From Octopus bimaculoides (taxonomy: Eukaryota), in assembly GCF_001194135.2 (NCBI RefSeq), contig NC_068998.1, positions 44,737,400-44,781,815 of the forward strand: a stretch of 44,416 bases of DNA, in the 5' to 3' direction. Position 1 is the first letter of the stretch; the number at the start of each line of letters is the position of its first letter. The notes under the pieces are model-generated. The model made no database searches. It saw only the letters and a program-made list of their open reading frames with translations, and was not told the DNA's origin. The position numbers and the translations under genes are program-made. Positions 3,641-44,129 of this stretch are shown here, piece after piece.

Positions 3641-3693
3641 GCCATAGTAGACACACAGTCAAGAACTAAGATAACTATGCATAAAAACTATAT

Positions 3694-4097
3694 GGCAAAG
3701 GTGTAGTTGTCTGGTAAAAAGTTTGCTTCCCAACCACATGGTTCTGGGTTCAGTCCCATTGCATGACACCTTGGGCAAGTGTCTTCTACTATAGCCTCAG
3801 GCCAACCAAAGCCTTGTGAGTGGATTTGGGAGATGGAAACTGAAAGAAGACCATTGTATATATTTGTATATATCTATGAGTGTGTCTCTGCAACTGTGTT
3901 TATCCCCCATGACCACTTGACCACCAGTGTTGATGTGTTTACATCCCCGTAACCTAGCAGTTCAGCAAAAGAGACCAATAGAATAAGTACTAGGCTTTAA
4001 AAAAAAAGTTCTGGAGTCAATTTGTTCGACTAAAACACTTCTAGGTAGTGCTCCAGCATGGCCACAATCAAATGACTGAAGCAAGTAAATGAATAAA
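3694..4097 (+). mobile_element. Composite tRNA-derived SINE (family A), older full-length copy
   Basis: A/B-box-like head (GGTTCAGTCCC), body ACCTTGGGCAAGTGTCTTCTACTATAGCC, internal TA/TG microsatellite, 3' part ending GCTCCAGCATGGCCACAATCAAATGACTGAAGCAAGTAAA. Aligns by eye with the copies at 28871, 30453 and 36345. Confidence 0.85.
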
Positions 4098-7011: not shown

Positions 7012-9270
7012 CATCATCATCATCATTATTTAACATCCATGTTTTATGCTGACTGGGTTGAATGACTTCACAAGATTCAGTGGGATAAAGGACTGCATTT
7101 TAATCCAGCATCTATTTTGACATGGTTTCTAAAGCTAGATGTCCTTCCCAATTCCAAACACTTTATCACATGTACTGGGTACCTTTAAAATGTCATTAGC
7201 ACTTGTGTGATCACAATGCAGCTTTCAAGACAATGAACCCTGAGGACAACAACCTTATGCTAAGAAATATTGAGTAAAGAGGGGGTAAATTACAAAAGAA
7301 ATGACCAGAGCAGAATAGATTTTTTGTTGTAGAGATGTTGCATGTCTACTCACATTTTAGAGGAGAGGATAGGAGAGATTGAGCGGAGCTGAAAAGCAAA
7401 TGGTAATAGAGGTGATCAAGCGTCAGTGGGGGGGGGGCCTTCAAGGTACAAGGTGGGTAGAAAAGAGAGGACTAGTGTGACCAGGAGTTTAGGGAGGGGA
7501 TTTGTGATTGTGCAGAGCAGCAAAAGAGTAATGATGGTGCAGTTGAGAGGGTGTACTGGGTGTTCTTTTCATAACAACAGCTTGAGTGAAATCACCAGGT
7601 ATTTCCACAAGAGAAAACTCACTCCATGTTGCTTTTGCCAGGTATTAAGAAGCTAAAACATTATAGCATGACAGCAACATGTGTCATGCTGTAGTGAGAA
7701 TACATGGCTACCCTAACTGGAAAATGAGAGAAAAGGATGCTGGGGATGAGCTGTCAGGACATAGATATGTCTTCGTGTTACAAAAGGTGAATGTAATTAA
7801 GAATAGAGACTGAGGTGTGTGAAGTGTTAGGAATTCACTGAAGAGTGATCAGGGTGGAGCCATGATCAGTAATTATTTTCTGTTTGGTCACAAAATGTAG
7901 GAAATAGGAGTGGATCAGAGAAGAGGAGGTGATGGGTAGCATTACAAAACATGAGGCAAAGCAGATCTTCTTGAGCAGAAAGGTTACCTTGGTAACAGAA
8001 ACTATCTGCTACCTCTAGGGATCTTTCTAGGCATTCAAGAAAATCTATTTCCCATCTGTTCTCCATCTCTACTTTATCTGTGCATCTGTATGGAATTTCT
8101 ACTGACACCTTTTCCATATACCAAAGAGAGCCATTTTCATGAAAGGCGTAGTGTCCTGTCAGTTTTCCTGCTTACTACAATTTTGGCCTTTGTTAAGTTA
8201 TCTTCAAGACATTTTGATTGCAGGTTTTGCTTCCATGCCTGAAATTTCTTTTCTAATTCTACTACAGGTTCTGACATAAGAACCAGGTCATCAGCATAGA
8301 GGACACACTGGTCTCCTCTGTTATGGCCTCAAGTGCTATGATGAATAGGAGGGGACTGAGAAGTGAGCCTTAATGAGCTATTAACTCCATACTTAATTCA
8401 TTGTTGAACTTGTTGCTAATTTTCACCTAACTGACAGCAGCCCTGTACATGACTTGAATGACTCTCACATACCATTTATTTACTCCTTGCTTCTACAGCA
8501 AGCACCAAATCAGGGTACAGAGGAGGGTACTCTACTGAAACATTTCTTTAGGTCAATGAACAGCAAGTACAGCAATTTACTGGAGGCTAAGTACTTATCC
8601 TGCAGTTGCCTTTCTATGAAGAGAACATCAGCAGTGCTTCTCCATGGCACAAAACCAAACTACATTTCATGTAGGATAATCTGCTTCCAGATTAATGGAA
8701 TTATAACTATTTCAGTAGCATTTATGACCTGGTCCAGCAAGTTCATACCTCTGTAATTACATTTCTCTATGGCATTACCTTTAACTTTGTAACAATTTAA
8801 TATAATATTGCTAAATGAGTCATTGGATTTGACATCACTCTGTCCACTCTGTGATAAGGCAGTATCCCAATTCATCAACTATTTTTAAGTATCTCAGCTG
8901 TAATTCCTTGTGGATCAGGGGTATTTCCTGTCTTCATATCCTTGATTGGTTTATCTATCATGCTATTGCCAAATAGACTGTCTGGTCTCTCTGTGGGTTT
9001 CACGTTTTGAAGACTTTTCTCTTTTCCATGTATTCTCCAGATATAGTAGCCTTTCATAGTATTACTTTCATGACCATTTCGTTTCAAAATGACTAAATGC
9101 AAACATGCTATTATTTGACTGTCGACGTTCCTCATCTACAGCATCACGATCTCGATTCTCTCTAATACTCTATCTAACAATCCATGTTGTCAGCTTGTGC
9201 ACTCATCACTCAAAACACCATTTGTCACCCAAAATGTTTTATGCTTGGAAAATTATTCATAAACCAATTT
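7012..9270 (-). mobile_element. Decayed RTE-clade LINE retrotransposon (5'-truncated, RT pseudogene with frameshifts and stops)
   Basis: Minus-strand motifs in the correct order: DKPIKDMKTGNTPDPQGITAEILK; IILNCYKVKGNAIEKCNYRGMNLLDQV; GSLLSPLLFIIALEAI; LYADDLV (YADD at 8287-8298); KGVSRNSIQ; SLEVADSFCYQG; then an (ATG)n tail at 7012-7030. Confidence 0.9.
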
Positions 9271-9340
9271 ATTCATGATGAGAGGCATCTATTAACCAAA
9301 GTTTCACTCTGTGTGTGTGTATGCGTGTGTCTATACATGT

Positions 9341-9747
9341 TCTTTCATTTTTTGCTTGTTTCCGTCATTTGACTGTGGCCATGCTGGAGCACTGCCTTGA
9401 AGAGTTTTAGTCAAACAAATAGCACCCAGGAGATATTTTTTTTTTAAAGCTGAGTACTTATTCTGTCTGTTAATTTTACTAAGCTGCTAAGTTACAGAGA
9501 TGTAAACACACCAACACCGGTTGTCCAGCAGTGGTGGGGAGAGAAACACAGACACAACGATACACACACACAAACACACATACACGATGGGCTTCTTTCA
9601 GTTTCCATCTACCAGATCCACTCATAAGGTTTTGGTCGGCCCAAGACTATAGTAGGAGACAATTGCCCAAGGTGCCACACAGTGGGACTGAACCTGGAAC
9701 TATGTGGTTGTGAAACATGCTTCTTACCACACAGCCACACCTGTACC
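9341..9747 (-). mobile_element. Family A SINE, full length, inverted
   Basis: Reverse complement of all family A modules, including the head (ACAGCCACACCTGTACC). Confidence 0.85.
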
Positions 9748-9829
9748 TATATATATGTATATGTATACACACACACACACACAAATATATATGTACACAG
9801 ATAGATACATATGTAGTTATCTATACCTG

Positions 9830-11039: not shown

Positions 11040-11675
11040 NNNNNNNNNNNNNNNNNNNNNNNNNNNNNNNNNNNNNNNNNNNNNNNNNNNNNNNNNNNNN
11101 NNNNNNNNNNNNNNNNNNNNNNNNNNNNNNNNNNNNNNNNNNNNNNNNNNNNNNNNNNNNNNNNNNNNNNNNNNNNNNNNNNNNNNNNNNNNNNNNNNNN
11201 NNNNNNNNNNNNNNNNNNNNNNNNNNNNNNNNNNNNNNNNNNNNNNNNNNNNNNNNNNNNNNNNNNNNNNNNNNNNNNNNNNNNNNNNNNNNNNNNNNNN
11301 NNNNNNNNNNNNNNNNNNNNNNNNNNNNNNNNNNNNNNNNNNNNNNNNNNNNNNNNNNNNNNNNNNNNNNNNNNNNNNNNNNNNNNNNNNNNNNNNNNNN
11401 NNNNNNNNNNNNNNNNNNNNNNNNNNNNNNNNNNNNNNNNNNNNNNNNNNNNNNNNNNNNNNNNNNNNNNNNNNNNNNNNNNNNNNNNNNNNNNNNNNNN
11501 NNNNNNNNNNNNNNNNNNNNNNNNNNNNNNNNNNNNNNNNNNNNNNNNNNNNNNNNNNNNNNNNNNNNNNNNNNNNNNNNNNNNNNNNNNNNNNNNNNNN
11601 NNNNNNNNNNNNNNNNNNNNNNNNNNNNNNNNNNNNNNNNNNNNNNNNNNNNNNNNNNNNNNNNNNNNNNNNNNN
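11040..11675. other. Assembly gap (N run); other large gaps at 14246-14306, 21089-21504, 24171-24620, 43436-43643
   Basis: N characters. Most gaps abut (TA)n arrays. ORFs spanning them are artefacts. Confidence 0.99.
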
Positions 11676-12512: not shown

Positions 12513-12870
12513 GATGCCAAGGCATGGCTGTGTGGTAAGAAGCTTGCTTCCCAACCACATGGTTCAGGGTTCAGTCCCACTGTGTGGCAACTTGGTGAAA
12601 TGTTTTCTACTATAGCCTCGGGTCGACCAAAGCCTTGTGAGTGGATGTGGTAGGTGGAAACTGAAAGTAGCCCATCGGACTTGTGTGTGTTTGTGTGTTT
12701 GTCTCCCGGCCAGCACTTGACAACTGATGCTGGTGTGTTTATATCCCTATAACTTAGTGGTTCGGCAAAACAAAAACCAATAGAATAAGTACTAGGCTTA
12801 CAAAGAATAAGTCTTGAGATTGATTTCTTTGACCAAAACTCTTTAAGTTGGTGTAAAAGAATAAAAGAAT
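12513..12870 (+). mobile_element. Family A SINE, near full length
   Basis: Head, body, TG microsatellite and most of the 3' module; the terminal segment is deleted. Confidence 0.8.
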
Positions 12871-14245: not shown

Positions 14246-15179
14246 NNNNNNNNNNNNNNNNNNNNNNNNNNNNNNNNNNNNNNNNNNNNNNNNNNNNNNN
14301 NNNNNNCTGGTGAACCAGATGGCTACACCAGGCTCTAATCTGATTTGGCAGGGTTTATATATATAAACTTTGTAGCTTTCTTATTTTCGATTTTCTTTTC
14401 CATACACGAACATAACCTTATGTTCATGAACGGAATTATAGTGCATTTTCAAGATCAAATTTAAAGCAATATTTTTGAGCTTAAAATAAATGTTATTCAG
14501 TAAAATATTGACTGGAATACTCATTTTGATTATCAACAGAAACATGTACAATAGTTTTTAAGAATCTCTTTGCATGCAAACACATATACACAAACACATA
14601 TATTTAAGTCCTTTGCTAACTGAAAAATTTTTCCACCCATCATTATCCAGTCATTTTTTTCTGTACTACACTATCAATATGTTCTTCCATCTTTTTCGAT
14701 CTTTCGAATGCAATGTATCAAAGATCACATTAGCCAATTTGTTATGGCTGCTATTTCTAGCAGGGTGAGTGACTATATAGAGACTTTTTCACCAGCTTGC
14801 TATTACTGCTCTTGTTCAACCCCAGGTTGGCCCTGATTGTATTATGATCAAATACCTTCCTGCCATGACTATCCCATATTTCATTACAATATTACTGAAT
14901 ATGTCCTTTATTTAAAATGGTATCAGGTCATTTGTATGAGTTTTCACTACTATTTCAGCAGATCGGGTAGCTTGCAAAGAAGTTCTTTTTGCTGTTGTAG
15001 TTGTTTAATGTGATTTAACTGGGAGAGGTTTGGGGAGTTGAAAAAGGCTTTCCTTCCTTCTCCCCCATCATTCACTGCAAATTCAATGATTCTTGCCAAT
15101 TAAGGAACCCCTAAGGTGTCTGACTAATTAAGGCAACAGATGCTGTGAGGAAATGTATTTAAGGTTTCAACATCCATGA

Positions 15180-15625
15180 GACTCACACCTTCACCTATGC
15201 TACAACCACTGCCATGACAGTGCTACCACAACCACTACCACCTCCACCACAACAACCACTATCACCACCGCCATCGCAACCATAACCACAACTGCAGAAT
15301 TCCCTAATGTAACACTACCTCCTCCCCTACTGCAACTATTATCCCCACCACCACTGCATCACCCCATTAACACCACCCCTGTCACCATTTATACAATACC
15401 CCACTTTTACTACTGCTACTACTTGCATTGCAATGTTCGCACCATTAATGTGATAATACCACTACTACTGCACAAAGCAATGCTACCACCTAAACCACAA
15501 CTACTGCAACACCCTACCATTACTGTGTCCCCCAGTGAAGTGGTACATTCACCACTAATGTGACACTACCACCACAACCCTCACCATTTACCACCTGCAT
15601 CACTGCTATTGTGGCACTCTTACTA
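15180..15625. repeat. Degenerate (CAC/TAC)n low-complexity block
   Basis: C/A-rich triplet-periodic sequence with no long open frame listed. Confidence 0.7.
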
Positions 15626-15626
15626 C

Positions 15627-16250
15627 TAATAAGCCTTTATATTATAGGTGCAAATTTTTGGGAAGGGGGCTAGTTTATTACTTCGACCCCAGTATTTAAC
15701 TGGTACTTAGTTTATCAACTACAAAATGATAAAAAGTATAGTCGACCTTGGCAGAATTTGAACTCAGAACATAAAGATGGACAAAATGCCGCTATTTTAC
15801 CCAGCTCACTGCCTTAATAATCATAATAATAATCCATTCTACTAAAACCATGAGGTTTGAAATTTTTGGGGAAGGAGCTAGTCATTTATATTGACCCCCA
15901 TATGTAACTGGTACTTATTTTGTTGACCCCAAAAGCAAAGTCAACCTCAGTGGAATTTGAATTCAGAACGTAAAGACAGACAAAATGCCACTAAGCATTT
16001 TACCCAGCTCACTGCTTTAATATCTGCTAAAGGCACAACGACTGAAATTTTGAGGGAGGAGCTAGTCGATTATATTGACCCACATACATAACTGGTACTT
16101 ATTTCATTGACCCCCCCCCCCACAAAAAAAAAAGATAAAATGCAGAGTCGCCTCTGGCGGAATTTGAACTCAGAACGTAAAGATGAACGAAATGCCACTA
16201 AGCCGTTTTCTTGGCACAGTAACAATTCTGCCAGCTCGACGCCTTAATAA
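15627..16250 (-). mobile_element. Tandem array of three copies of tRNA-derived SINE family E
   Basis: Units start near 15627, 15815 and 16018. The minus strand has head GGCG.CGAGCTGGCAGAA, B-box-like GTTCAAATTCC and the motif GGGGTCAA..AAATAAGTACCAGT. Dispersed copies at 18995, 22572, 31135 and 35245. Confidence 0.8.
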
Positions 16251-16254
16251 CAAT

Positions 16255-16395
16255 ATTCTTTTACTTGTTTCAGTCATTTTGACTGCGGCCATGCTGGAGC
16301 ACCACCTTTAGTCGAGCAATTCGTCTCTAGGACTTATTCTTTGTAAGCCTACTATTTATTCATCAGTCTTTTTTGCCGAACTGCTAGGTTACTAC
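16255..16395 (-). mobile_element. Family A SINE 3' fragment, young
   Basis: Near-exact reverse complement of the 3' module seen at 29140-29263. Confidence 0.85.
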
Positions 16396-17030
16396 TACTA
16401 CTACTACTACTACCACCACAACTACCACCAAGACCATTAAGACCAACACTGCCATTGCCACCAACACCACTGTCACTAGCAGTGGTTGTAGCAGTGGTAC
16501 TGCTGGTCTTGGAAGTGGTTGTGATACACTGGTTGTGGTACTGATGGAGATAGTGATAGTAACATGGTGGTGGTGGTGGTGGTGGTGGTGGTAATGGTAT
16601 GGTCATATCAGTAATGGTGATTGATGATAGCAATAATTGCGATGGTAGCAGTGCTGGTGGTGGTGAAGGAGATGGTGCTCTGGTCTTGTTGGTGATGGTA
16701 TAAATGGAATGATAAATGTGCTATTAGGGGTTGTTGAGGCAGTGGTTTTGGGGTTTGTTTTGTTGCTGTTTTTCCTTCCGGATTGCTACATTTGTTTTCT
16801 TTCTTTGATTTTCGGAGCCGCCTCTTTAGTAGGCAGCTCCACTGTTTTCTTACGTCATNNNNNNNNNNNNNNNNNNTGGTTGTGGTAGTGGTGGTGGTGG
16901 TGGTGGTTGTGGTTGTGTTGGTTGTGGTAGTGGTGGTGGTAGTGGTGGTGGCGGTTGTTGTTGTTGTTGTTGTTGTTGTGGTGGTGGTGGGGGTTGTTGT
17001 TGTTGTTGTCGTTGATGTAGCAACATTGCT
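16395..17030. repeat. Degenerate (TAC/CAC)n then (GGT/GTT)n triplet repeats
   Basis: Direct reading. Polarity switches from C-rich to G-rich near 16470. Confidence 0.75.
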
Positions 17031-17279
17031 TGCAGTCGAAACTGATAACCGATTTAAAGAAGGATGTAGAAAGAAGGCGATTAAAGGATTGTTAAGTATG
17101 AGTGAGAATGATAAATCAATTGTTTCCTGCAGTGGGAGGGAGGAGCTTTATGAACTATGGGAGCAGAGGAATGTTGGGGAGAAGTCTTTGCAATAAAACA
17201 AAGGAAAAACAATAAAAAAGAAAAAGGGAATGAAACAAAATAAAATGAAAATAATACCTGAAATGAAAGTTTCACTGAG

Positions 17280-17960
17280 GAGGAGGAGATGATGATGATG
17301 ACAATGATAATGATGATGATGATGATGGTGGTGACGATGATGATGATTGAGAGGATGATGACAATGATGATGATGAGGATGATTGGGATGACGATGATGA
17401 CAATGGTGACAATGATGATGATGATTAAGAGGATGATGATGACAATGATGATGATAATGATGATGCGGATGATGAGTGGAGTTATACACAGTGGGGTACA
17501 TCAGTAATCTGAAAATTGATTGACCCCACCCTACCCAAATATCTGCCCATCATAGCCTCCCCCCCCCCCNNNNNNNNNNNNNNNNNNNNNNNNCCCCCCG
17601 CTCTCCCAATAATTCTTGATAATGTTGATGTAACTGTACCAACAACCCCAGTGCCATTACCATTATGCAGCACCACCACTCTCCCCCCTCCACTATCCCC
17701 CCACCACCACTATCCTCACTGCCATCACCGTCACCACTGCTCCCCTCCCAACATCCACCCCACACATCACCATCATCCTGGTTTACCCTCCTCTAATACC
17801 ACAGCACCACTCATCCACCACATGGAACCATCACCACCACTACTACTACTACTACTACGATTACCACCCATCCGCTCACCCATGCCATCACGCCTGCCAC
17901 CCATCACCCATGCCCCCACCCTCATTGTCATCAGTGCTGCTACTCTATCCTGAACTGCAA
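17280..17960. repeat. (GAT)n-derived block (17280-17480) and (CAC/CAT)n-derived block (17520-17960)
   Basis: The poly-M, poly-H and poly-P ORFs in the track arise from these repeats. Confidence 0.75.
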
Positions 17961-18026
17961 CAATGATGCACATAATACATGTGCACATTTGCAATTAATC
18001 CTTAATAATTATATTTCATTTCATTT

Positions 18027-18088
18027 AAACAATAACTTTACCACCCCCCAGCATCCACCTGGATGTGGGGGTGGTAAAGTTATTGTTT
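18027..18088. repeat. Near-perfect 29-bp inverted repeat (hairpin/cruciform)
   Basis: AAACAATAACTTTACCACCCCCCAGCATCCA-CC-TGGATGTGGGGGTGGTAAAGTTATTGTTT. The arms are complementary except for two single-base bulges in the left arm. Confidence 0.95.
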
Positions 18089-18143
18089 CTGTTTCATAAA
18101 TTTTTAATTAGTTCTGTGAATGTGTGTCCCCCACCTCACTTAC

Positions 18144-19351: not shown

Positions 19352-19720
19352 ATGGTTCCAGGTTCAGTCCCACTGCATGGCACCTTGGGCAAGTGTCTTC
19401 TACTATAGCCTCGGGCCGACCAAAGCCTTGTGAGTAGATTTGGTAGACGGAAACTGAAACAAGCCTGTTGTATATATATGTGTATATATATATGTGTGTG
19501 TATGTTTGTGTGTCTGTGTTTGTTCCCCCAACATCACTTGATAACCGATGCTGGTGTGTTTACATCCCTATAACTTAGCAGTTCGGCAAAAGAGACCGAT
19601 AGAATAAGTACTAGGCTTCCAAAGAATAAGTCCTGGGGTCGATTTGCTCGACTAAAGGTGGTGCTCCAGCATGGCCGCAGTCAAATGACTGAAACAAGTA
19701 AAAGAGTCAAAGAGTAAGAG
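19352..19720 (+). mobile_element. Family A SINE, 5'-truncated, young
   Basis: Near-identical to 28915-29263. Confidence 0.9.
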
Positions 19721-21088: not shown

Positions 21089-21620
21089 NNNNNNNNNNNN
21101 NNNNNNNNNNNNNNNNNNNNNNNNNNNNNNNNNNNNNNNNNNNNNNNNNNNNNNNNNNNNNNNNNNNNNNNNNNNNNNNNNNNNNNNNNNNNNNNNNNNN
21201 NNNNNNNNNNNNNNNNNNNNNNNNNNNNNNNNNNNNNNNNNNNNNNNNNNNNNNNNNNNNNNNNNNNNNNNNNNNNNNNNNNNNNNNNNNNNNNNNNNNN
21301 NNNNNNNNNNNNNNNNNNNNNNNNNNNNNNNNNNNNNNNNNNNNNNNNNNNNNNNNNNNNNNNNNNNNNNNNNNNNNNNNNNNNNNNNNNNNNNNNNNNN
21401 NNNNNNNNNNNNNNNNNNNNNNNNNNNNNNNNNNNNNNNNNNNNNNNNNNNNNNNNNNNNNNNNNNNNNNNNNNNNNNNNNNNNNNNNNNNNNNNNNNNN
21501 NNNNAAAAAAAAAAAAAAAAAAAAATGTACTCAGTCAATTCATTCAACTAAAATCTCTTCAAGGTGGTGCCTCAGTATGGCTGCAATCTAAAAGACTGAA
21601 ACAAATAAAAGAAAAATAAG
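20865..21620 (+). mobile_element. Family A SINE spanning an assembly gap
   Basis: Head and body at 20865-21030, then (TA)n and a gap, then the 3' module at 21525-21620. Confidence 0.7.
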
Positions 21621-23447: not shown

Positions 23448-23830
23448 ACAGGTATGGCTATGTGGTAAGAAATTTGCTTCCCAACCACATGGTTCTGGGT
23501 TCAGTCCCACTTCGTAGCACTTTGGACAAGTGTCTTCTACTTTAGCCTTGGGCCAACTAAAGCCTTGTGAATAGATTTCATAGAGAGAAACTGAAAGAAG
23601 CTTAATGTGTGTGTGTGTGTGTGTGTGTCCCCACTGCTGCTTGAGAACTGGTGTTAGTTTGTTTACGTCATTGTAACTTAACAGTTCAGCAAAAGGAAAC
23701 GATAAAATGAGGACCCGACTTAGAACAATTTATTGAGGCTGATTCGTTCAACTATAGCAAATAAAAATTCTTTAGGGCAGTGCTCCAGCAGGGTAGCAGT
23801 CAAATTATTGAAAAAGGTAAAAGAAAAAAA
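23448..23830 (+). mobile_element. Family A SINE, older full-length copy (further fragment at 23930-24090)
   Basis: Head CAGGTATGGCTATGTGGTAAG, body, (TG)n slot and 3' module are all present. Confidence 0.8.
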
Positions 23831-24620
23831 ATAACATATGTATAAGCACAGACACACACATACATACACAAAAACTCATGCATACAGACACACACTGGTA
23901 TAAACACACATACGATTGGCTTTCTGTATTTGTCTGTATTTATGCTGTAAAAGGACTTAGTAGACAGAAACTGAAAGAAGCCTGTTGTGTATGTGTGCGT
24001 GTGTGTGTGTGTGTGTGTGTTTGTGTGTGTGAGTGTTTATATTTATGCTGTGACTGTTTATACTCCACTACTTAGCAGTTAAACAAAAAGATAACATTAA
24101 AATAAATCTTATAGTCAAGCCATTGTGCATTGAGGGAGACGTCAGTAGTCTCTAAAATCCACAAAGGACANNNNNNNNNNNNNNNNNNNNNNNNNNNNNN
24201 NNNNNNNNNNNNNNNNNNNNNNNNNNNNNNNNNNNNNNNNNNNNNNNNNNNNNNNNNNNNNNNNNNNNNNNNNNNNNNNNNNNNNNNNNNNNNNNNNNNN
24301 NNNNNNNNNNNNNNNNNNNNNNNNNNNNNNNNNNNNNNNNNNNNNNNNNNNNNNNNNNNNNNNNNNNNNNNNNNNNNNNNNNNNNNNNNNNNNNNNNNNN
24401 NNNNNNNNNNNNNNNNNNNNNNNNNNNNNNNNNNNNNNNNNNNNNNNNNNNNNNNNNNNNNNNNNNNNNNNNNNNNNNNNNNNNNNNNNNNNNNNNNNNN
24501 NNNNNNNNNNNNNNNNNNNNNNNNNNNNNNNNNNNNNNNNNNNNNNNNNNNNNNNNNNNNNNNNNNNNNNNNNNNNNNNNNNNNNNNNNNNNNNNNNNNN
24601 NNNNNNNNNNNNNNNNNNNN

Positions 24621-26945: not shown

Positions 26946-28104
26946 TATGTATATGTAGTGCATCAGCATGGCCGCAGCTCTGAGCTGAAACTTTGAAATG
27001 AAATGAAAAAGTATATATGCGATTTAAATACCCACATTTGTTAATAAAAAGAAGTTATGCCCTGTGTGTAGGTGTTTTTGTGTGTGTGTTTGTGTGTGTA
27101 TATTTGTGCATGTGTGTGTGTATACATATGTATATAAACACACACGTGTGTAGGTATGTGTGCATGTATATACATACAAACATGCATATACCTATATATA
27201 TATATATGTGTGTGTCTGTGTGTTACTTTTATTTATAGGAGTATTAAAATATTTTTCCCTTATAGTGTATTATTGTATAAAGTTATAAAGATGAGTGTAT
27301 TGAATATAGTCTAATGCCCTTGATAATTGATCCACCCATCAAGCCTCCTGGGGCTAAACAGCAACACCAGCAATCAACTCAGCAACCACAATTCATGCTG
27401 AATACTTCTGTATTTTCCCTGGAACTGTTCATAGTCAAAAGCTTATAGAGGTCAGGGTCAGTGGGTGAGAAACAGATGGTTAATTGGAGCCGGACTGGTT
27501 TCTTTCTAAGCAATGTGTCTGATGGTAGAGACTCTGTATATTGTTGGGAGAGAAGTGTGTTGGTTCATTTTATGTCTCGCGATCGAGATAACAGACTATT
27601 ATCAGTAAATGAACTACAAAAAACTAAGAACAAAAATAACTGTACATAGACATATTTATTTTATATTTAAAACACAAATTAATATTTATGTGCGTATGCC
27701 TATGCATGTGTTCATATGTTGTGCATGTATGCATATGACTGTATGTGTGTGTGTATTTATATATATGTATATGTGTGTTGTTTGTGTGTATATACCTGTG
27801 TGAATATATATGTGTGAGTGTTGCATTTGTGTATATGTGTGTTATATTATGATGGATATATGTAATAGAATATGCTTGCTATGGTATTTAACTATTGCTT
27901 TATTAGGGCACTAAAACATGCTTGTTCCTCATAAACACACACAAATTATGTTTTGCTTGCTAAAACCATTAGGATATTTGGAATAATCATGTTTGGTCAA
28001 AACTAAACTTTTCAATTTTTACAGTATCTATATTTAGAAAATACACTGCAGTCTTTAATGAACTGAGTTGCAGCCTTTATAGGATCTTAAAAGAGAATGC
28101 TTAA

Positions 28105-28325
28105 CCCCTAAGCATTCAGAATACTCTGTCAAATGTAATGCTTGTTCATTCTTATTGTTCTGTATTAACCATGCATTATCTTGTGGCTTTGAGATTTCAG
28201 TGATGTTATTGTATATTTTTTTTATTTTCAAAATGACATTATGGGGAAGGTGGAAGAGGTTGGATCTGGCCAGTTTAAACAGGCAGAATATTTTGGTCAG
28301 ATATGGCTGGTTTAAATGTGGTGCA
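28105..28325. mobile_element. piggyBac-type MITE copy (inverted relative to 41238)
   Basis: TTAA|CCCCTAAGCATTCAG start; the interior is the reverse complement of 41238-41453; the far end is degenerate. A third partial copy lies at about 31270-31450. Confidence 0.65.
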
Positions 28326-28420
28326 ATAATTGCTATCTAGCACTTCTTTTCAAACTGTTTTATTTTTTATAACATAACCTGTAAATGTTTTTTGACCAAC
28401 AAATCAACCAGTAGCTGATT

Positions 28421-28472
28421 TACTAATGGTCATTATTATTTTTTTTTCTGTTTCTTCTTCTTACAGGTAAGA
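28421..28472 (+). promoter_or_regulatory. 3' splice site juxtaposed to a 5' splice site (candidate recursive splice site)
   Basis: TACTAAT branchpoint-like motif at 28421-28427, no AG until 28465, polypyrimidine tract TTTTTTTTTCTGTTTCTTCTTCTTA, CAG at 28464-28466, then immediately GTAAGA. Confidence 0.55.
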
Positions 28473-28507
28473 TATATATATATATATATTCATTTCACTG
28501 AAGGAAT

Positions 28508-28552
28508 ATGTTTGGTTCTGTCAGAAAACCTGGTTTAGATGGTAAAGAGAAG
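28508..28552 (+). CDS. Candidate start-codon-containing exon segment MFGSVRKPGLDGKEK (phase 0)
   Basis: ATG at 28508 with A at -3 and an in-frame upstream stop at 28499. The frame is open to the AAG|GTAACG donor at 28552/28553. It lies in the 86-nt exon defined by the 28466 acceptor. No homology recognised. Confidence 0.35.
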
Positions 28553-28659
28553 GTAACGTTTTTATTTCATTGTTTGTTATAGACATTCATCTATAAGGCA
28601 CAAACAGAAATGAGTAAATGATAAACAATTGGTTACTTCAACAATGTAACTACTCGTGT

Positions 28660-28840
28660 GCCATTGGTGATTTCTTTCCCATCTTTTGGAATTTTCCCTT
28701 TCTCCTTTCTGACAAAGAGTTATGCCCGAAATGTCAAACTCACGCCTTTCATCAAGTATCAAGCTAAAACATTTCTTGTGCACATCCACACATTCACTTT
28801 TTGTCATGTTTTTCGTATGCTTTCGTTTTTTTATTTCTTC
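28660..28840 (+). mobile_element. Penelope-like terminal fragment with a second decayed hammerhead motif (28704-28740)
   Basis: CCTTT CTGACAA A GAG-TTATG-CCC GAAA TG TC AAAC has the same architecture as the reverse complement of 18451-18489. Confidence 0.5.
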
Positions 28841-28870
28841 ATTTGAATTGATGTTGTATATATATATATA

Positions 28871-29263
28871 GGCGCAGGAGTGGCTGTGTGGTAAGTAGCT
28901 TGCTTACCAACCACATGGTTCCGGGTTCAGTCCCACTGCATGGCATCTTGGGCAAGTGTCTTCTACTATAGCCTCGGGCCGACCAAAGCCTTGTGAGTGG
29001 ATTTGGTAGACGGAAACTGAAAGAAGCCCGTCGTATATATGTATATATATATATATGTGTATGTGTGTGTCTGTGTTTGTCCCCCCAACATAGCTTGACA
29101 ACCGATACTGGTGTGTTTACGTCCCCGTAACTTAGCGGTTCGGCAAAAGAGACCGATAGAATAAGTACTAGGCTAACAAAGAATAAGTCCTGGGGTCGAT
29201 TTGCTCGACTAAAGGCGGTGCTCCAGCATGGCTGCAGTCAAATGACTGAAACAAGTAAAAGAG
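28871..29263 (+). mobile_element. Family A composite tRNA-derived SINE, young full-length reference copy
   Basis: GGCGCAGGAGTGGCTGTGTGG (A-box-like), GGTTCAGTCCC (B-box-like), GCGCAG/CTGCAT acceptor-stem remnant, body, TA/TG slot, 3' module ending AAGTAAAAGAG. Inserted in a TA run. Confidence 0.92.
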
Positions 29264-29282
29264 TATATATATATATATATAT

Positions 29283-29313
<31 letters not shown>

Positions 29314-30010: not shown

Positions 30011-30452
30011 TTTGCATGTGCCGGCTCCAAAATTTATTTTGGCATCGNNNNNNNNNNTTAAATCTGGATATTGTTTAGAAGAAAAAACAAATCTTCTCTA
30101 AATATAATGTATAGCTTGCTGTTCGTGTGATGCAAAGGTTGAGGGATTCTTTTAACATTTATTTGTTGGTTGGTTTCTAATTATATATTAATTTTTTACT
30201 TGTTTTGTATCTCAGTTTAATTTTGTTCATTTTTTTTTGTTAGTTTTTCTTTTACTTTATTTCATTTATTTACATATATTCCATTGCACTTGCCAAACAA
30301 TGAGTTCATTGGTTAAAAGTTTCCATCAGGTCAATCAGTGGTTCCTTGTGTTTCTGATTTCTAATGGTGTGATAGCTAGATTGAGTTTGGGTTGGTTGGC
30401 AGTTCTTGTGTTTTGAACTAGATGAACCAGAGAGGAAATCATTTACATAATA

Positions 30453-30618
30453 GGCGCAGGAGTGGCTGTGTGGTAAGTAGCTTGCTTACCAGCCACATGG
30501 TTCCGGGTTCATTCCCACTATGTGGCATCTTGGGCAAGTGTCTTCTACTATAGCCTCGAGCCAACCAAAGCCTTCTGAGTGGATTTGGTAGATGGAAAAC
30601 TGAAAGAAGCCCATCGTA

Positions 30619-30690
<72 letters not shown>

Positions 30691-30880
30691 TGTGTCTGTG
30701 TTTGTCCTTCCAACATCGCTTGACAACCGATGCTGGTGTGTTTACGTCCCCGTAACTTAGCGGTTCGCCAAAAAGAGACCGATAGAATAAGTACTAGGCT
30801 TACAGAGAATAAGTCCTGGGGTCGATTTGCTCAAATAAAGGCGGTGCTCCAGCATGACTGAAACAAGTAAAAGAGTAAAA
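30453..30880 (+). mobile_element. Family A SINE, young full-length copy with a small 3' deletion
   Basis: Near-identical to 28871-29263; CCAGCATG joins directly to ACTGAAAC. Confidence 0.92.
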
Positions 30881-31134: not shown

Positions 31135-31260
31135 TCGACTTTACTTTCATCCATTTAGGGCTGATAAATTAAGTACCAGCTGTGTACTGGGTCGATCTAA
31201 TCAACTGCCTCCCCTCCCCCAAAATTTGAGGCCTTGTGCCTAGAATAGAAAAGATTATTC
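31135..31260 (+). mobile_element. SINE family E 3' half
   Basis: GGTCGACTTTTACTTTCATCCATTTAGGGCTGATAAATTAAGTACCAG...CCCCAAAATTTGAGGCCTTGTGCC. Confidence 0.7.
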
Positions 31261-31912
31261 TATCAAATGTGATTCTTATTTATCCACATGGTTTTGATTT
31301 CTTCATGCATCGGCTTGCAGCTGTCTAATTTCAACGATGTGATTGTATATTCTAATGAGCTTGTTGGGTAGGTGTAAGAGGCCAGATCTAACCAGTTCGA
31401 ACATAAAGCATGTAGGAAATAATTCTGGCCCAGATATGGCTGGTTTATCATGCGTTTGCTTGTCCAGAACAATTGTAACAGTTTGTAAAATCAACCACTG
31501 AGGTAGCTAGTATTTTATCTTGAGTTACTGAATGCATCAGTCAAATTTGTCTCAGCAGACTCTCAACTGTCAGTAAATAGCTTTTATATGCATTAGGGAC
31601 ATAGCTCCTTCTATACGTAGTTACCCAGCCTAAGATAACCAACAAACTTTCCTTTACCAACTCCCAACCATCTTTAAGATGACTCTTTGTGTGTGCATGG
31701 CCACAGTCAAATGACTGAAACAAGTAAAATAAAAGAATATATATATGTGTGTGTGTGTTTATATGCACACACGCACGCACGTATATATATCTGCTTTTAT
31801 ATTTTTTCGGCAGAAGTTAAGGTAACTCAAGGGCCAAGAATTTTATACATGACACTTATCAAACGCCATGGCTTGAAACTCTTGAATCATTTTGAAACTG
31901 TTGCCAATTAAA

Positions 31913-36316: not shown

Positions 36317-37049
36317 CAGGGGTTGTCAACCATTTCTTATCTATGGCGCAGGAGTGGCTGTGTGGTAAGTAGCTTGCTTACCAACCGCATGGTTCCGAGT
36401 ACATTCCCACTGCGTGGCATCTTGGGCAAGTGCCTTCTACTATAGCCTCGGGCCGACCAAACCCTTGTGAGTGGATTTGGTAGACGGAAACTGAAAGAAG
36501 CCTGTCGTACATATGTATTTATATATGTATGTGTGTGTATATGTTTGTGTGTCTGTGTTTGTCCCCCCAACATCGCTTGACAACCGATGGTGGTGTGTTT
36601 ACGTCCCCGTAACTGAGCGGTTTGTCAAAAGAGACCGATAGAATAAGTACTAGGCTTACAAGGAATAAGTCCTAGGGTCGGTTAACTTGACTAAAAGTCA
36701 GTGCTCCAGCATGGCCACAGTCAAATGACTGAAACAAGTAAAAGAGTATGGATCCATTTGTTTATATTTTTATTTTAGTGGACCCCACCATAGCCATTCA
36801 TTGTTTAAAAACTAATTTTATAAAAAACTTCTTCCAAGATTTCTGTTTTGTTTTTCACACATTAACTTATGTAGGTTGGACTGTGTAAAATGTTAAAGAA
36901 TGAAACCTAGCTGTCTTGCAGTATATACATACATTTAAAGCAACATTTTTTCAGGGGCCCTTAAAATGTTATTTTGGATCCCTAACTTACTGTTTTGTAG
37001 CATGGACCTCCCCTCAAATTCTTATATGGACCCCAGCTGAGAACCACTG
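36317..37049. mobile_element. hAT (Charlie-like) MITE with 8-bp TSD
   Basis: Termini CAGGGGTTGTCAAC and GCTGAGAACCACTG are imperfect TIRs (11/14). Flanks TTATAGAT (36309-36316) and TTATAGAA (37050-37057) match at 7/8 and resemble the NTCTAGAN Charlie target. Confidence 0.75.
36345..36746 (+). mobile_element. Young family A SINE nested in the hAT MITE
   Basis: Near-identical to 28871-29263; flanked by TAT(GG) on both sides, 28 bp inside the MITE left end. Confidence 0.9.
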
Positions 37050-41237: not shown

Positions 41238-41453
41238 CCCTTTAGCATTTATACCAGGCATATCTAGCCCAAATATTCTCTATGCTATGTTTAAATGAGC
41301 CATATCTGACCTCTTACACCTATCCTGTAATATCATTCTAAAAATAAACTATCACATTGAAATCTTGAAGTTATAAGATAATGCAATGGTTAATTAAAAA
41401 CAATGTCAATAAACAAATATTATATTTCACAAAGTAATCTGAATTCTAAAGGT
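41238..41453. mobile_element. piggyBac-type MITE with TTAA target-site duplication
   Basis: TTAA (41234-41237)|CCCTTTAGCATTT ... GAATTCTAAAGGT|TTAA (41454-41457); 216 bp, non-coding. Confidence 0.75.
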
Positions 41454-41559
41454 TTAAATCTAAGATAGAATAACTTGCAGGATTTCTTTTGGAGTTCTGC
41501 ATTCTCACTTCAAACCCTACCAAGTTCATCTTTGTACCCTTTAAGAGTCTTCTAATGAA

Positions 41560-43260: not shown

Positions 43261-44129
43261 TTGTTTCTTCTAAGGCCGTATTCTGTAGATATATCTCGAC
43301 GTTGTTAAGGAATGTAATTTAAGCTGCTTTAATATGATTAACCAGAATGGTAAAATAGTAAGATGGCATGGTTTCATCCATATTCTAAGAACTCTACAGT
43401 AATTCATGAATAATCTAATAGGAGAGTGTTGATATNNNNNNNNNNNNNNNNNNNNNNNNNNNNNNNNNNNNNNNNNNNNNNNNNNNNNNNNNNNNNNNNN
43501 NNNNNNNNNNNNNNNNNNNNNNNNNNNNNNNNNNNNNNNNNNNNNNNNNNNNNNNNNNNNNNNNNNNNNNNNNNNNNNNNNNNNNNNNNNNNNNNNNNNN
43601 NNNNNNNNNNNNNNNNNNNNNNNNNNNNNNNNNNNNNNNNNNNGGTGGCAGAGGCAGTAGTAAGAGCAATGCTAATTGAGGTGGTGGTGATGGTGGTGGG
43701 TGATTATGGTAGCAGTGGCATTGTTGGATCGGTGATTATTGAAAAAAAAAAAGCAGTGATGATGACAATGAAGATGAAGGTAATGATGACAATGATGCGG
43801 CTGATGATTATGATATGGCAGGATTTGGGGGTGGAGGGGGATCAATGGTTAGATATTGATGGTGGTGGGTGATTTAGGTCGCGGATGGTGCGGTGGTTTG
43901 AAAGTGGGGCAAGAAGAGCAGAAAAGAGGTAAAATCAGTTCAAGTGGAAAATTATTGATGGAAATTTAGATCAATACAGTCAAAAATATAATGGAATTTG
44001 CTGTTTTACCATTTCATTGTTATTTTATCTGACTTTTTACGTATTTTCTGGTTTTAATTTTGGAATAAAATATTCTGTCAAGAAATTTTATTTAATTAAA
44101 CAATATCATTCTGATAATTGATTTTCTTC

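What the first reader, a model, noticed from the sequence alone, without database searches (positions are those of the whole stretch)
28421..28558. Candidate recursive splice site with a downstream RS-exon that carries a start codon
Seen in the sequence: a complete 3' splice site (TACTAAT branchpoint-like motif, 38-nt AG-free zone, ~25-nt polypyrimidine tract, CAG) is followed with zero spacing by GTAAGA, so splicing to it regenerates a 5' splice site. A second donor (AAG|GTAACG) lies 86 nt downstream. The 86-nt segment has stops in all three incoming frames but contains an ATG opening MFGSVRKPGLDGKEK up to the second donor. Established: this AG|GT plus cryptic-exon layout is how recursive splicing works in long Drosophila and vertebrate introns, mostly in neural genes. 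Inference: donor choice would switch between silent intron ratcheting and inclusion of an exon supplying a start codon (or a poison exon). I am not aware of recursive splicing described in cephalopods.
Basis: partly seen in the sequence, partly recalled or inferred. Interest (0 to 1): 0.72.

Follow-up and report, generated by a model that had tools for sequence, protein, structure and literature searches.

The report
Candidate recursive splice site, unverified
A very strong 'end-of-intron' signal sits directly against a strong 'start-of-intron' signal, the layout that flies and vertebrates use to remove long introns in steps. It is rarer than chance allows in this window, but nothing here shows that it is transcribed, used or conserved.

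Summary
The acceptor (TACTAAT, 24-nt pyrimidine tract, CAG ending at 28466) is the best of 4,575 AGs on both strands of the window. It abuts GTAAGA, one of the four best donors.

Three independent estimates give 0 to 0.005 such juxtapositions per window by chance. That still means roughly 200-250 chance sites in a genome of about 2.7 Gb. TT at -5/-6, a consensus branch point and a weaker donor 86 nt downstream all fit the published anatomy of fly ratchet points with cryptic RS-exons.

The 'start codon' and 'stops in all frames' features are at chance level (P about 0.24-0.56 and 0.43). No protein in the searched collection contains the peptide.

The window has no recognisable coding exon, only SINEs, one dead LINE, microsatellites and gaps. 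The host gene, its strand and its transcription are therefore unknown, and no orthologous sequence or RNA data could be reached.

Estimated probabilities:
- a real recursive site: about 0.4
- a chance pseudo-site: about 0.3
- an ordinary exon that happens to start with GTAAGA: about 0.2

If real, it is a new member of a known kind in an unstudied clade.

The parts
28421..28427 (+). Branch-point-like TACTAAT. The candidate branch A is 28426, position -41 from the splice junction.
   Evidence: Read. TACTAAY lies 13-50 nt upstream of only 14 of 4,572 AGs in the window. It is the only full YTNAY match that I found by eye in the 45 nt before the AG.
28439..28462 (+). Polypyrimidine tract of 24 nt with one G, built from a T9 run and (TTC) repeats, with TT at -5/-6.
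   Evidence: 19 of the 21 positions from -24 to -4 are pyrimidines. Only 130 positions on both strands have a tract sub-score as high.
28464..28466 (+). CAG, the 3' splice-site core. The AG-free zone 28415-28464 precedes it.
   Evidence: the last upstream AG ends at 28414. The acceptor PWM score of 14.6 bits is rank 1 in the window.
28467..28472 (+). GTAAGA, a 5' splice site abutting the acceptor. This is the donor that would be regenerated after splicing to 28467.
   Evidence: It scores 11.4 bits with its present upstream CAG and 7.2 bits for the intronic part alone. CAGGTAAGA matches 8 of 9 positions of the U1-complementary consensus CAGGTAAGT.
28467..28552 (+). Candidate cryptic RS-exon of 86 nt. 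The length is not a multiple of 3 and there are stops in all frames. It contains an (AT)9 microsatellite at 28472-28489.
   Evidence: The stops and the frame shift are compatible with a cryptic or poison exon but are not statistically unusual.
28508..28552 (+). ATG-initiated open frame of 15 codons (MFGSVRKPGLDGKEK) running to the second donor.
   Evidence: It is expected by chance in 24% of 86-mers. No protein in the collection shares three 5-mers with it.
28550..28558 (+). AAG|GTAACG, the weaker downstream donor (exon end 28552) that could define the RS-exon.
   Evidence: It scores 7.55 bits (4.35 for the intronic part) and matches the U1-complementary consensus CAGGTAAGT at 6 of 9 positions. 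A donor this good lies 30-150 nt downstream of 11% of random positions.

Best explanation
The AG|GT at 28466/28467 is a recursive splice site (ratchet point) with a cryptic RS-exon, inside a long intron of an unidentified + strand gene.

Proposed mechanism:
1. U2AF and U2 recognise the TACTAAT branch site, the pyrimidine tract and the CAG.
2. Recognition is helped by exon definition from U1 bound at the weaker AAG|GTAACG donor 86 nt downstream.
3. The upstream exon is ligated to position 28467. This places GTAAGA directly after that exon and so recreates a strong 5' splice site.
4. The recreated site outcompetes the weaker downstream donor. The 86 nt and the rest of the intron are removed in a second step, and nothing from this locus remains in the mRNA.
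5. Occasional use of the downstream donor would insert an 86-nt piece that shifts the frame and carries stops, that is, a poison exon.

Only the sequence anatomy is shown here. Transcription, strand, use of either site and order of events are inferred by analogy with Drosophila and vertebrate recursive splicing.
For: The acceptor is the best in the window and sits directly against one of the best donors. Chance expectation is 0-0.005 per window by three methods.

The site shows the features reported for the 197 fly ratchet points:
- a prominent pyrimidine tract
- TT at -5/-6, present in 99.5% of fly ratchet points against 44% of ordinary introns
- AG|GTAAG
- the same GTAAGA hexamer as the recursively spliced Ubx microexons (bioRxiv 10.1101/006163)

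A consensus branch motif is present (0.3% of random AGs).

A weaker donor lies downstream, and the intervening 86 nt shift the frame and contain stops. This matches the description of cryptic RS-exons and the rule that the ratchet-point donor is stronger than the RS-exon donor (PMC8605326).

No recognisable coding exon lies within 28.4 kb upstream or 15.9 kb downstream. That is compatible with a very long intron.

In all five invertebrates tested by Shepard et al., sea urchin included, such motifs are 4-22 times enriched on the sense strand of large introns. The background is about 0.1 per 100 kb (PMC2773006).

The four best combined AG|GT scores in the window are all on the + strand. T exceeds A on the + strand, and the one LINE reverse-transcriptase remnant is antisense to it. 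These last points are weak hints that + is the sense strand.
Against: There is no evidence that the locus is transcribed, on which strand, or that it lies in a gene at all. An exon-free 44-kb window is also what intergenic DNA looks like.

At 0.004 per window, a genome of about 2.7 Gb should hold some 200-250 equally strong sites by chance.

The tract is assembled from low-complexity runs (T9, TTC repeats) and is followed at once by an (AT)9 microsatellite, in a genome rich in such runs.

The candidate branch A is at -41, outside the -21 to -36 range that holds most mapped fly recursive branch points.

The RS-exon is 86 nt against about 50 nt in flies.

Conservation, the strongest discriminator in flies, is untested.

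It is unknown whether cephalopods use ratchet points at all; vertebrates show almost no motif enrichment.
Confidence: 0.4

Rival explanations
1. It is a chance pseudo-site. A low-complexity pyrimidine run happens to be followed by CAGGTAAGA in untranscribed, antisense or simply unconstrained DNA, and it has no role in splicing.
For: The expected rate of 0.003-0.005 per window scales to a few hundred sites in a genome of about 2.7-2.8 Gb (genome size). The finding was selected for the motif. The tract is made of T9 and TTC repeats, and an (AT)9 run follows. The window has no detectable exon, no CpG island and no RNA gene. The 'start codon', 'stops' and 'second donor' features are common by chance.
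Against: The added TACTAAT branch motif (0.3% of AGs), TT at -5/-6 and the downstream donor (11%) reduce the expected number of chance sites carrying all these features. The estimate falls to about one per genome or fewer, if the features are treated as independent and not chosen after the fact.
Confidence: 0.3
2. It is an ordinary exon, possibly alternative or unannotated, spanning 28467-28552 whose first six bases happen to read GTAAGA. The exon is included in mRNA as a 5'-UTR plus start-codon exon, an untranslated exon or a regulated poison exon. The GT at 28467 is not normally used.
For: The acceptor is strong, with branch point, tract and a downstream donor at a typical exon distance. The ATG at 28508 has A at -3 and is open to the donor. 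With about 170,000 annotated exons in an octopus genome, a few hundred exons should start with GTAAG by chance. Mammals have thousands of such expressed RS-exons kept in mRNA by the exon junction complex (PMC8605326; PMC6224609).
Against: No protein in the 5.8-billion-sequence collection shares three 5-residue words with MFGSVRKPGLDGKEK or with the other frames. A 1,344-aa composite of nearby open frames also found nothing. This negative is weak, because the same tool also missed the clear reverse-transcriptase remnant. The exon cannot be internal coding sequence, since all frames have stops. It also contains an (AT)9 microsatellite. No neighbouring exon is visible within 28 kb upstream or 16 kb downstream.
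Confidence: 0.2
3. Only the donor is real. A non-coding exon ends at 28466 with a T-rich 3' part, GTAAGA is its normal 5' splice site, and the acceptor look-alike is accidental.
For: CAG|GTAAGA is a near-consensus 5' splice site (8 of 9 U1 positions). UTR exons can have any composition.
Against: It needs a top-ranked tract, a consensus branch motif and a 50-nt AG-free zone to lie by accident inside an exon. No promoter-like CpG island or upstream acceptor of note is nearby.
Confidence: 0.05

Closest known systems
Drosophila intronic ratchet points with cryptic RS-exons ('zero-nucleotide' recursive splicing: Hatton 1998, Burnette 2005, Duff 2015, Joseph 2018/2021, Pai 2018)
   Same: [quoted passage not shown] There is also a short downstream segment that shifts the frame, carries stops and ends in a weaker donor. 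The surrounding region is exon-free over tens of kilobases.
   Different: There is no evidence of use, of sense-strand intronic position or of conservation. The candidate branch point is at -41 rather than -21 to -36. The segment is 86 nt rather than about 50 nt. The organism is apparently a cephalopod, where the mechanism has not been reported.
Ubx microexons mI/mII (expressed recursive exons in Drosophila)
   Same: The exon begins with exactly GTAAGA directly after the 3' splice site, so donor choice decides between inclusion and skipping.
   Different: The Ubx microexons are 51 nt, preserve the frame and are coding. This segment is 86 nt and has stops in all frames.
Vertebrate RS-exons (Sibley 2015; Blazquez 2018)
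   Same: The RS-exon is defined first. The reconstituted 5' splice site then competes with the RS-exon donor. Inclusion usually introduces a premature stop.
   Different: Vertebrate cases were defined by RNA evidence and lie in identified long neuronal genes. No host gene or RNA evidence is available here.
Pseudoexons or decoy splice-site pairs in long introns
   Same: Good-looking acceptor and donor pairs with no coding content, lying in repeat-rich intronic DNA.
   Different: Pseudoexons do not normally combine a top-ranked acceptor with an abutting consensus donor.

Membership tests
Recursive splice site / ratchet point | [quoted passage not shown] | tested here: met
   The sequence is TTCTTCTTCTTACAG|GTAAGA. 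The acceptor is rank 1 and the donor is in the top 4 of the window. The pattern has 1 match against 0 in 100 shuffles.
Recursive splice site / ratchet point | Prominent pyrimidine tract with TT at -5/-6 (99.5% of fly ratchet points) | tested here: met
   T is at 28461 and 28462. 19 of the 21 positions from -24 to -4 are pyrimidines.
Recursive splice site / ratchet point | [quoted passage not shown] | tested here: inconclusive
   The motif TACTAAT is consensus-like, but its A is at -41, just outside the usual range. No lariat data are available.
Recursive splice site / ratchet point | Downstream cryptic RS-exon ending in a donor weaker than the ratchet-point donor, with exon content out of frame or carrying stops | tested here: met
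   The segment is 86 nt. The donors score 7.55 against 11.4 bits (4.35 against 7.24 for the intronic parts). All frames have stops. Each of these features is individually common by chance.
Recursive splice site / ratchet point | Lies on the sense strand of a long intron (fly: 11-133 kb) | not testable with these tools
   No annotation, transcript or homologous protein could be obtained. The only finding is that the 44-kb window contains no recognisable coding exon.
Recursive splice site / ratchet point | Splice-junction reads from an upstream exon to the site, sawtooth coverage, and lariats to and from the site | not testable with these tools
   No RNA-seq access.
Recursive splice site / ratchet point | Strong conservation of the AG|GT core across species relative to flanks and to control AGGT sites | not testable with these tools
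   No cephalopod genomes are in the searchable DNA collections. Exact-match scans of metagenome contigs for the site and for the exon found nothing.
Ordinary first coding exon (start-codon exon) | The peptide encoded from the ATG is the N-terminus of a known or predicted protein | tested here: not met
   No protein shares three 5-residue words with the query containing MFGSVRKPGLDGKEK. Whether the collection covers this organism's proteome is unverified, and the tool also missed a Pfam-confirmed RT remnant.

The most novel reading that the evidence does not exclude
Drosophila-type ratchet-point recursive splicing operates in the long introns of a cephalopod. This would be the first case in a mollusc or any lophotrochozoan. 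Together with the motif enrichment seen in insects and sea urchin, it would imply that the mechanism is ancestral to bilaterians and was largely lost or diluted in vertebrates. In the more specific version, donor choice at this site also switches an 86-nt exon carrying an alternative start codon in or out. I give that version about 0.05.
Probability: 0.35. Interest if true: 0.55.

Novelty: new member of a known kind. Interest (0 to 1): 0.35.

Why it matters
Recursive splicing has been demonstrated by RNA evidence only in flies and a few vertebrates. Octopus genomes are large, rich in repeats and carry very long neural genes, so how their long introns are removed accurately is an open and testable question.

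One validated site, and above all a genome-wide sense-strand excess of such motifs, would extend the mechanism to a third major animal lineage. It would also give gene annotators a class of cryptic exons to watch for.

On its own, one unvalidated motif match is only a lead.

Tried and rejected
- **Exact look-up of the neighbouring ORF.** The 76-aa ORF at 28577-28807 (- strand) was looked up in public assemblies to fetch allelic or orthologous DNA. It is not on record.
- **Protein homology searches.**
  - A 1,344-aa composite of 17 window ORFs including the peptide gave no hit at E<=10.
  - A 40-aa query of the RS-exon peptides gave no candidate sharing three words.
  - A 371-aa reverse-transcriptase composite, meant to identify the organism and check the collection's coverage, gave no hit at E<=0.001. 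Pfam nevertheless confirms RVT_1. Negatives from this tool are therefore weak for this genome.
- **Pfam.** A scan of 142 non-repetitive ORFs of 44 aa or more found only the reverse-transcriptase remnant.
- **Rfam and tRNA scans.** These were run to find an intronic RNA gene that would reveal the transcribed strand. They found nothing.
- **Metagenome scans.** Exact-match scans for the site and for the exon found nothing.
- **Repeat origin.** I tested whether the site is part of a repeat. The neighbouring repeat 28101-28318 ends 100 nt upstream and its other copies do not extend over the site. The SINE starts at 28857.
- **SINE orientation.** Tried as a strand indicator: about 12 copies on + and 6 on -, which is uninformative.
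- **Rejected readings.** An internal coding exon is ruled out because every frame has a stop. An assembly artefact is unlikely because the nearest gaps are at 24171-24620 and 30048-30057.

Full report
**1. The observation**

- TACTAAT at 28421-28427.
- An AG-free stretch from 28415 to 28464.
- A 24-nt pyrimidine tract at 28439-28462, with one G.
- CAG ending at 28466, followed with zero spacing by GTAAGA at 28467-28472.
- AAG|GTAACG, with the exon ending at 28552.
- An 86-nt segment between the two donors, with a stop in each frame.
- An ATG at 28508 that opens MFGSVRKPGLDGKEK up to the second donor.

No assembly gap is near; the nearest are 24171-24620 and 30048-30057.

**2. Is it more than chance?**

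I scored all AG and GT dinucleotides on both strands with simple position weight matrices. These are approximate human-like frequencies written from general knowledge, not MaxEnt.

- The acceptor at 28467 scores 14.6 bits, the best of 4,575 AGs.
- The abutting donor scores 11.4 bits, among the best 4 of 5,194 GTs.
- It is the only AG|GT in the window with both halves strong.
- Its combined score of 21.9 compares with 16.3 for the runner-up and 12.6 for the best site on the - strand.

Three chance estimates agree:
- Markov simulations of order 1, 3 and 5 give 0, 0 and 0.003 equally strong sites per window.
- Multiplying the 130 real positions with an equally good tract by the frequency of YAGGTAAG gives 0.004-0.005.
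- The tool's own shuffles give 0 of 100 for Y11-N-YAG|GTRAG against 1 observed.

The site is therefore unusual for a 44-kb window. At that rate, however, a genome of about 2.7-2.8 Gb (size from PMC10700109) should contain roughly 200-250 equally strong sites by chance.

Extra features behave as follows:
- TACTAAY 13-50 nt upstream of an AG is rare: 14 of 4,572 AGs.
- A donor at least as good as AAG|GTAACG (7.55 bits) within 30-150 nt is mildly unusual: P=0.11.
- An ATG open to the end of an 86-mer is common: P=0.56 for any length and 0.24 for 15 or more codons. A second ATG at 28539 is also open in another frame (read directly from the sequence).
- Stops in all three frames are common: P=0.43.

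The 'start codon' and 'poison' properties therefore carry no statistical weight.

**3. Surroundings**

The window is draft eukaryotic sequence with the following content:
- 12 runs of N, mostly flanked by (TA)n, and about 90 tandem-repeat rows.
- About 17 full or partial copies of a tRNA-derived SINE of about 450 bp. One copy lies at 28857-29311, just downstream of the site.
- A degenerate LINE reverse transcriptase on the - strand at about 7869-9135 (Pfam RVT_1, E=3.6e-10).

The repeat at 28101-28318 has diverged copies at 31252-31447 and 41246-41457. It ends 100 nt before the site, and the copies do not extend across it. The site itself is unique within the window.

No open frame in the window looks like a coding exon:
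- An amino-acid composition ranking brings up only low-complexity and repeat-derived frames.
- Pfam on 142 filtered ORFs of 44 aa or more finds only the RT remnant.
- A 1,344-aa composite query finds no homologue.
- Rfam and ARAGORN find nothing.
- CpG observed/expected is 0.06-0.54 throughout, with no island.

The site thus sits at least 28.4 kb downstream and 15.9 kb upstream of the nearest possible recognisable coding sequence. That fits a very long intron and fits intergenic DNA equally well.

Weak hints that + could be the sense strand:
- The four best combined AG|GT scores are all on +.
- T exceeds A on + by 7%, and AATAAA occurs 54 times on + against 79 on -.
- The one LINE reverse-transcriptase remnant is antisense to +.

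SINE orientation is uninformative, at about 12 copies on + and 6 on -.

The gap density of the window, one per 3.7 kb, is close to that of the chromosome-scale O. bimaculoides assembly. That assembly has 713,915 contigs in 2,342.5 Mb, or about one gap per 3.3 kb. This is an inference, not a test.

**4. Attempts to reach transcripts, proteins or orthologues**

- The neighbouring 76-aa ORF is not on record in public assemblies.
- No protein in the 5.8-billion-sequence collection shares even three 5-residue words with a 40-aa query. That query held the ATG peptide, its read-through and the frame-0 tail.
- This argues against an annotated start-codon exon. The negative is weak, because the same tool also returned nothing for the Pfam-confirmed RT remnant. 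I could not confirm that this organism's proteome is in the collection.
- Exact-match scans of metagenome contigs for the site and for the exon found nothing.
- None of the searchable DNA collections holds cephalopod genomes, and there is no RNA-seq access. Use and conservation therefore remain untested.

**5. Comparison with what is known**

The Duff et al. preprint (10.1101/006163) reports:
- 197 fly ratchet points, in introns of 11-133 kb.
- A more prominent pyrimidine tract than in ordinary introns.
- TT at -5/-6 in 99.5% of them, against 44% of all introns.
- Branch points mostly at -21 to -36.
- Strong conservation.
- GTAAGA as the donor at the recursively spliced Ubx microexons.

Joseph et al. 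(PMC8605326) describe the cryptic RS-exon. [quoted passage not shown] That difference is why the exon is skipped.

The present site meets these points:
- AG|GT with a strong tract.
- TT at -5/-6 (T at 28461 and 28462).
- GTAAGA.
- A weaker downstream donor: 7.55 against 11.4 bits, and 6 against 8 of 9 U1 positions.
- Content that shifts the frame and carries stops.

It departs on two points: the candidate branch A is at -41, and the exon is 86 nt long.

Shepard et al. (PMC2773006) found that ratchet-type motifs occur at about 0.1 per 100 kb on control strands in all 13 animals studied. They are enriched 4-22 times on the sense strand of large introns in four insects and the sea urchin. They are not enriched in vertebrates (ratio 0.9-1.5). 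No mollusc was included.

In the held literature:
- No paper contains 'recursive splic' together with 'octopus'.
- Two unrelated papers contain it with 'mollus'.
- One unrelated paper contains 'recursive splicing' with 'cephalopod'.

**6. Weighing the explanations (inference)**

The expected number of chance sites at this motif strength is about 240 per genome. Requiring a consensus-like branch motif and a downstream donor as well reduces it to roughly one per genome or fewer.

Ordinary exons that start with GTAAG, have an equally strong acceptor and are non-coding in all frames should number a few per genome. This takes about 170,000 exons; the rates are my own estimates.

The number of true ratchet points is the unknown:
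- If cephalopods resemble the invertebrates (hundreds of sites), true sites with these features outnumber both alternatives several-fold.
- If they resemble vertebrates (about ten), chance and ordinary exons win.

Averaging over that uncertainty gives these estimates:

| Explanation | Probability |
|---|---|
| Real recursive site | about 0.4 |
| Chance pseudo-site | about 0.3 |
| Ordinary (UTR, start-codon or poison) exon beginning with GTAAGA | about 0.2 |
| Real donor with an accidental acceptor look-alike | about 0.05 |

**7. Verdict**

The interpretation as a recursive splice site is the single most likely reading. It rests on sequence anatomy alone, and the defining functional and evolutionary criteria are untested.

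If real, it is a new member of a known kind in a lineage where the mechanism has not been reported. The most efficient next step is computational. Place the window in its annotated genome, look at public stranded total RNA-seq, and run the genome-wide sense-versus-antisense motif test.

Noticed in passing
window 28857-29311 and about 16 further copies (e.g. 3689-4095, 9310-9761, 12525-12837, 19352-19707, 23449-23870, 30441-30877, 36338-36767): A tRNA-derived SINE of about 450 bp makes up roughly 15% of the window. Each copy carries a decent donor look-alike in sense (GTGGCTGTGTG|GTAAGTAG) and an acceptor look-alike in antisense (CTTTTACTTGTTTCAG|TCATTTGACTG). The family therefore seeds many decoy splice sites.
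   Followed up: partly
window 7869-9135, - strand: A degenerate LINE reverse transcriptase, split over several frames and with a YADD motif (Pfam RVT_1, E=3.6e-10). The word-indexed protein search found no relative.
   Followed up: partly
window 39976 and 1063, + strand: Two weaker YAG|GTAAGT juxtapositions: ctctgttttacttcatag|GTAAGTAA and ttatcttcgatatag|GTAAGTAA. All three YAG|GTAAG sites in the window, and the four best combined AG|GT scores, are on the + strand. The spacings of 27.4 and 11.5 kb are in the range of fly recursive segments. With so few sites this could be coincidence.
   Followed up: partly
window, 12 N runs (e.g. 11040-11675, 21089-21504, 24171-24620, 43436-43643): Most of the larger gaps are flanked by (TA)n or (AT)n microsatellites. 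Gap density is one per 3.7 kb, similar to the published O. bimaculoides assembly (about one per 3.3 kb from the figures). This gives indirect support for the octopus origin.
   Followed up: partly
window 15000-18100: A block of higher G+C (0.41-0.44) is made largely of trinucleotide repeats (TGG, GTT, GAT, CAC/CAT). They give long His-, Pro-, Val- and Met-rich open frames on both strands. Pfam found no domain.
   Followed up: no
window 28101-28318, 31252-31447 (+), 41246-41457 (-): A second, older interspersed repeat family of about 200 bp (67-72% identity between copies). One copy ends 100 nt upstream of the candidate site and does not include it.
   Followed up: yes
whole window: Strong CpG depletion everywhere (observed/expected 0.06-0.54 in 2-kb bins) with no CpG island. 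T exceeds A on the + strand by about 7%, and AATAAA occurs 54 times on + against 79 on -.
   Followed up: no
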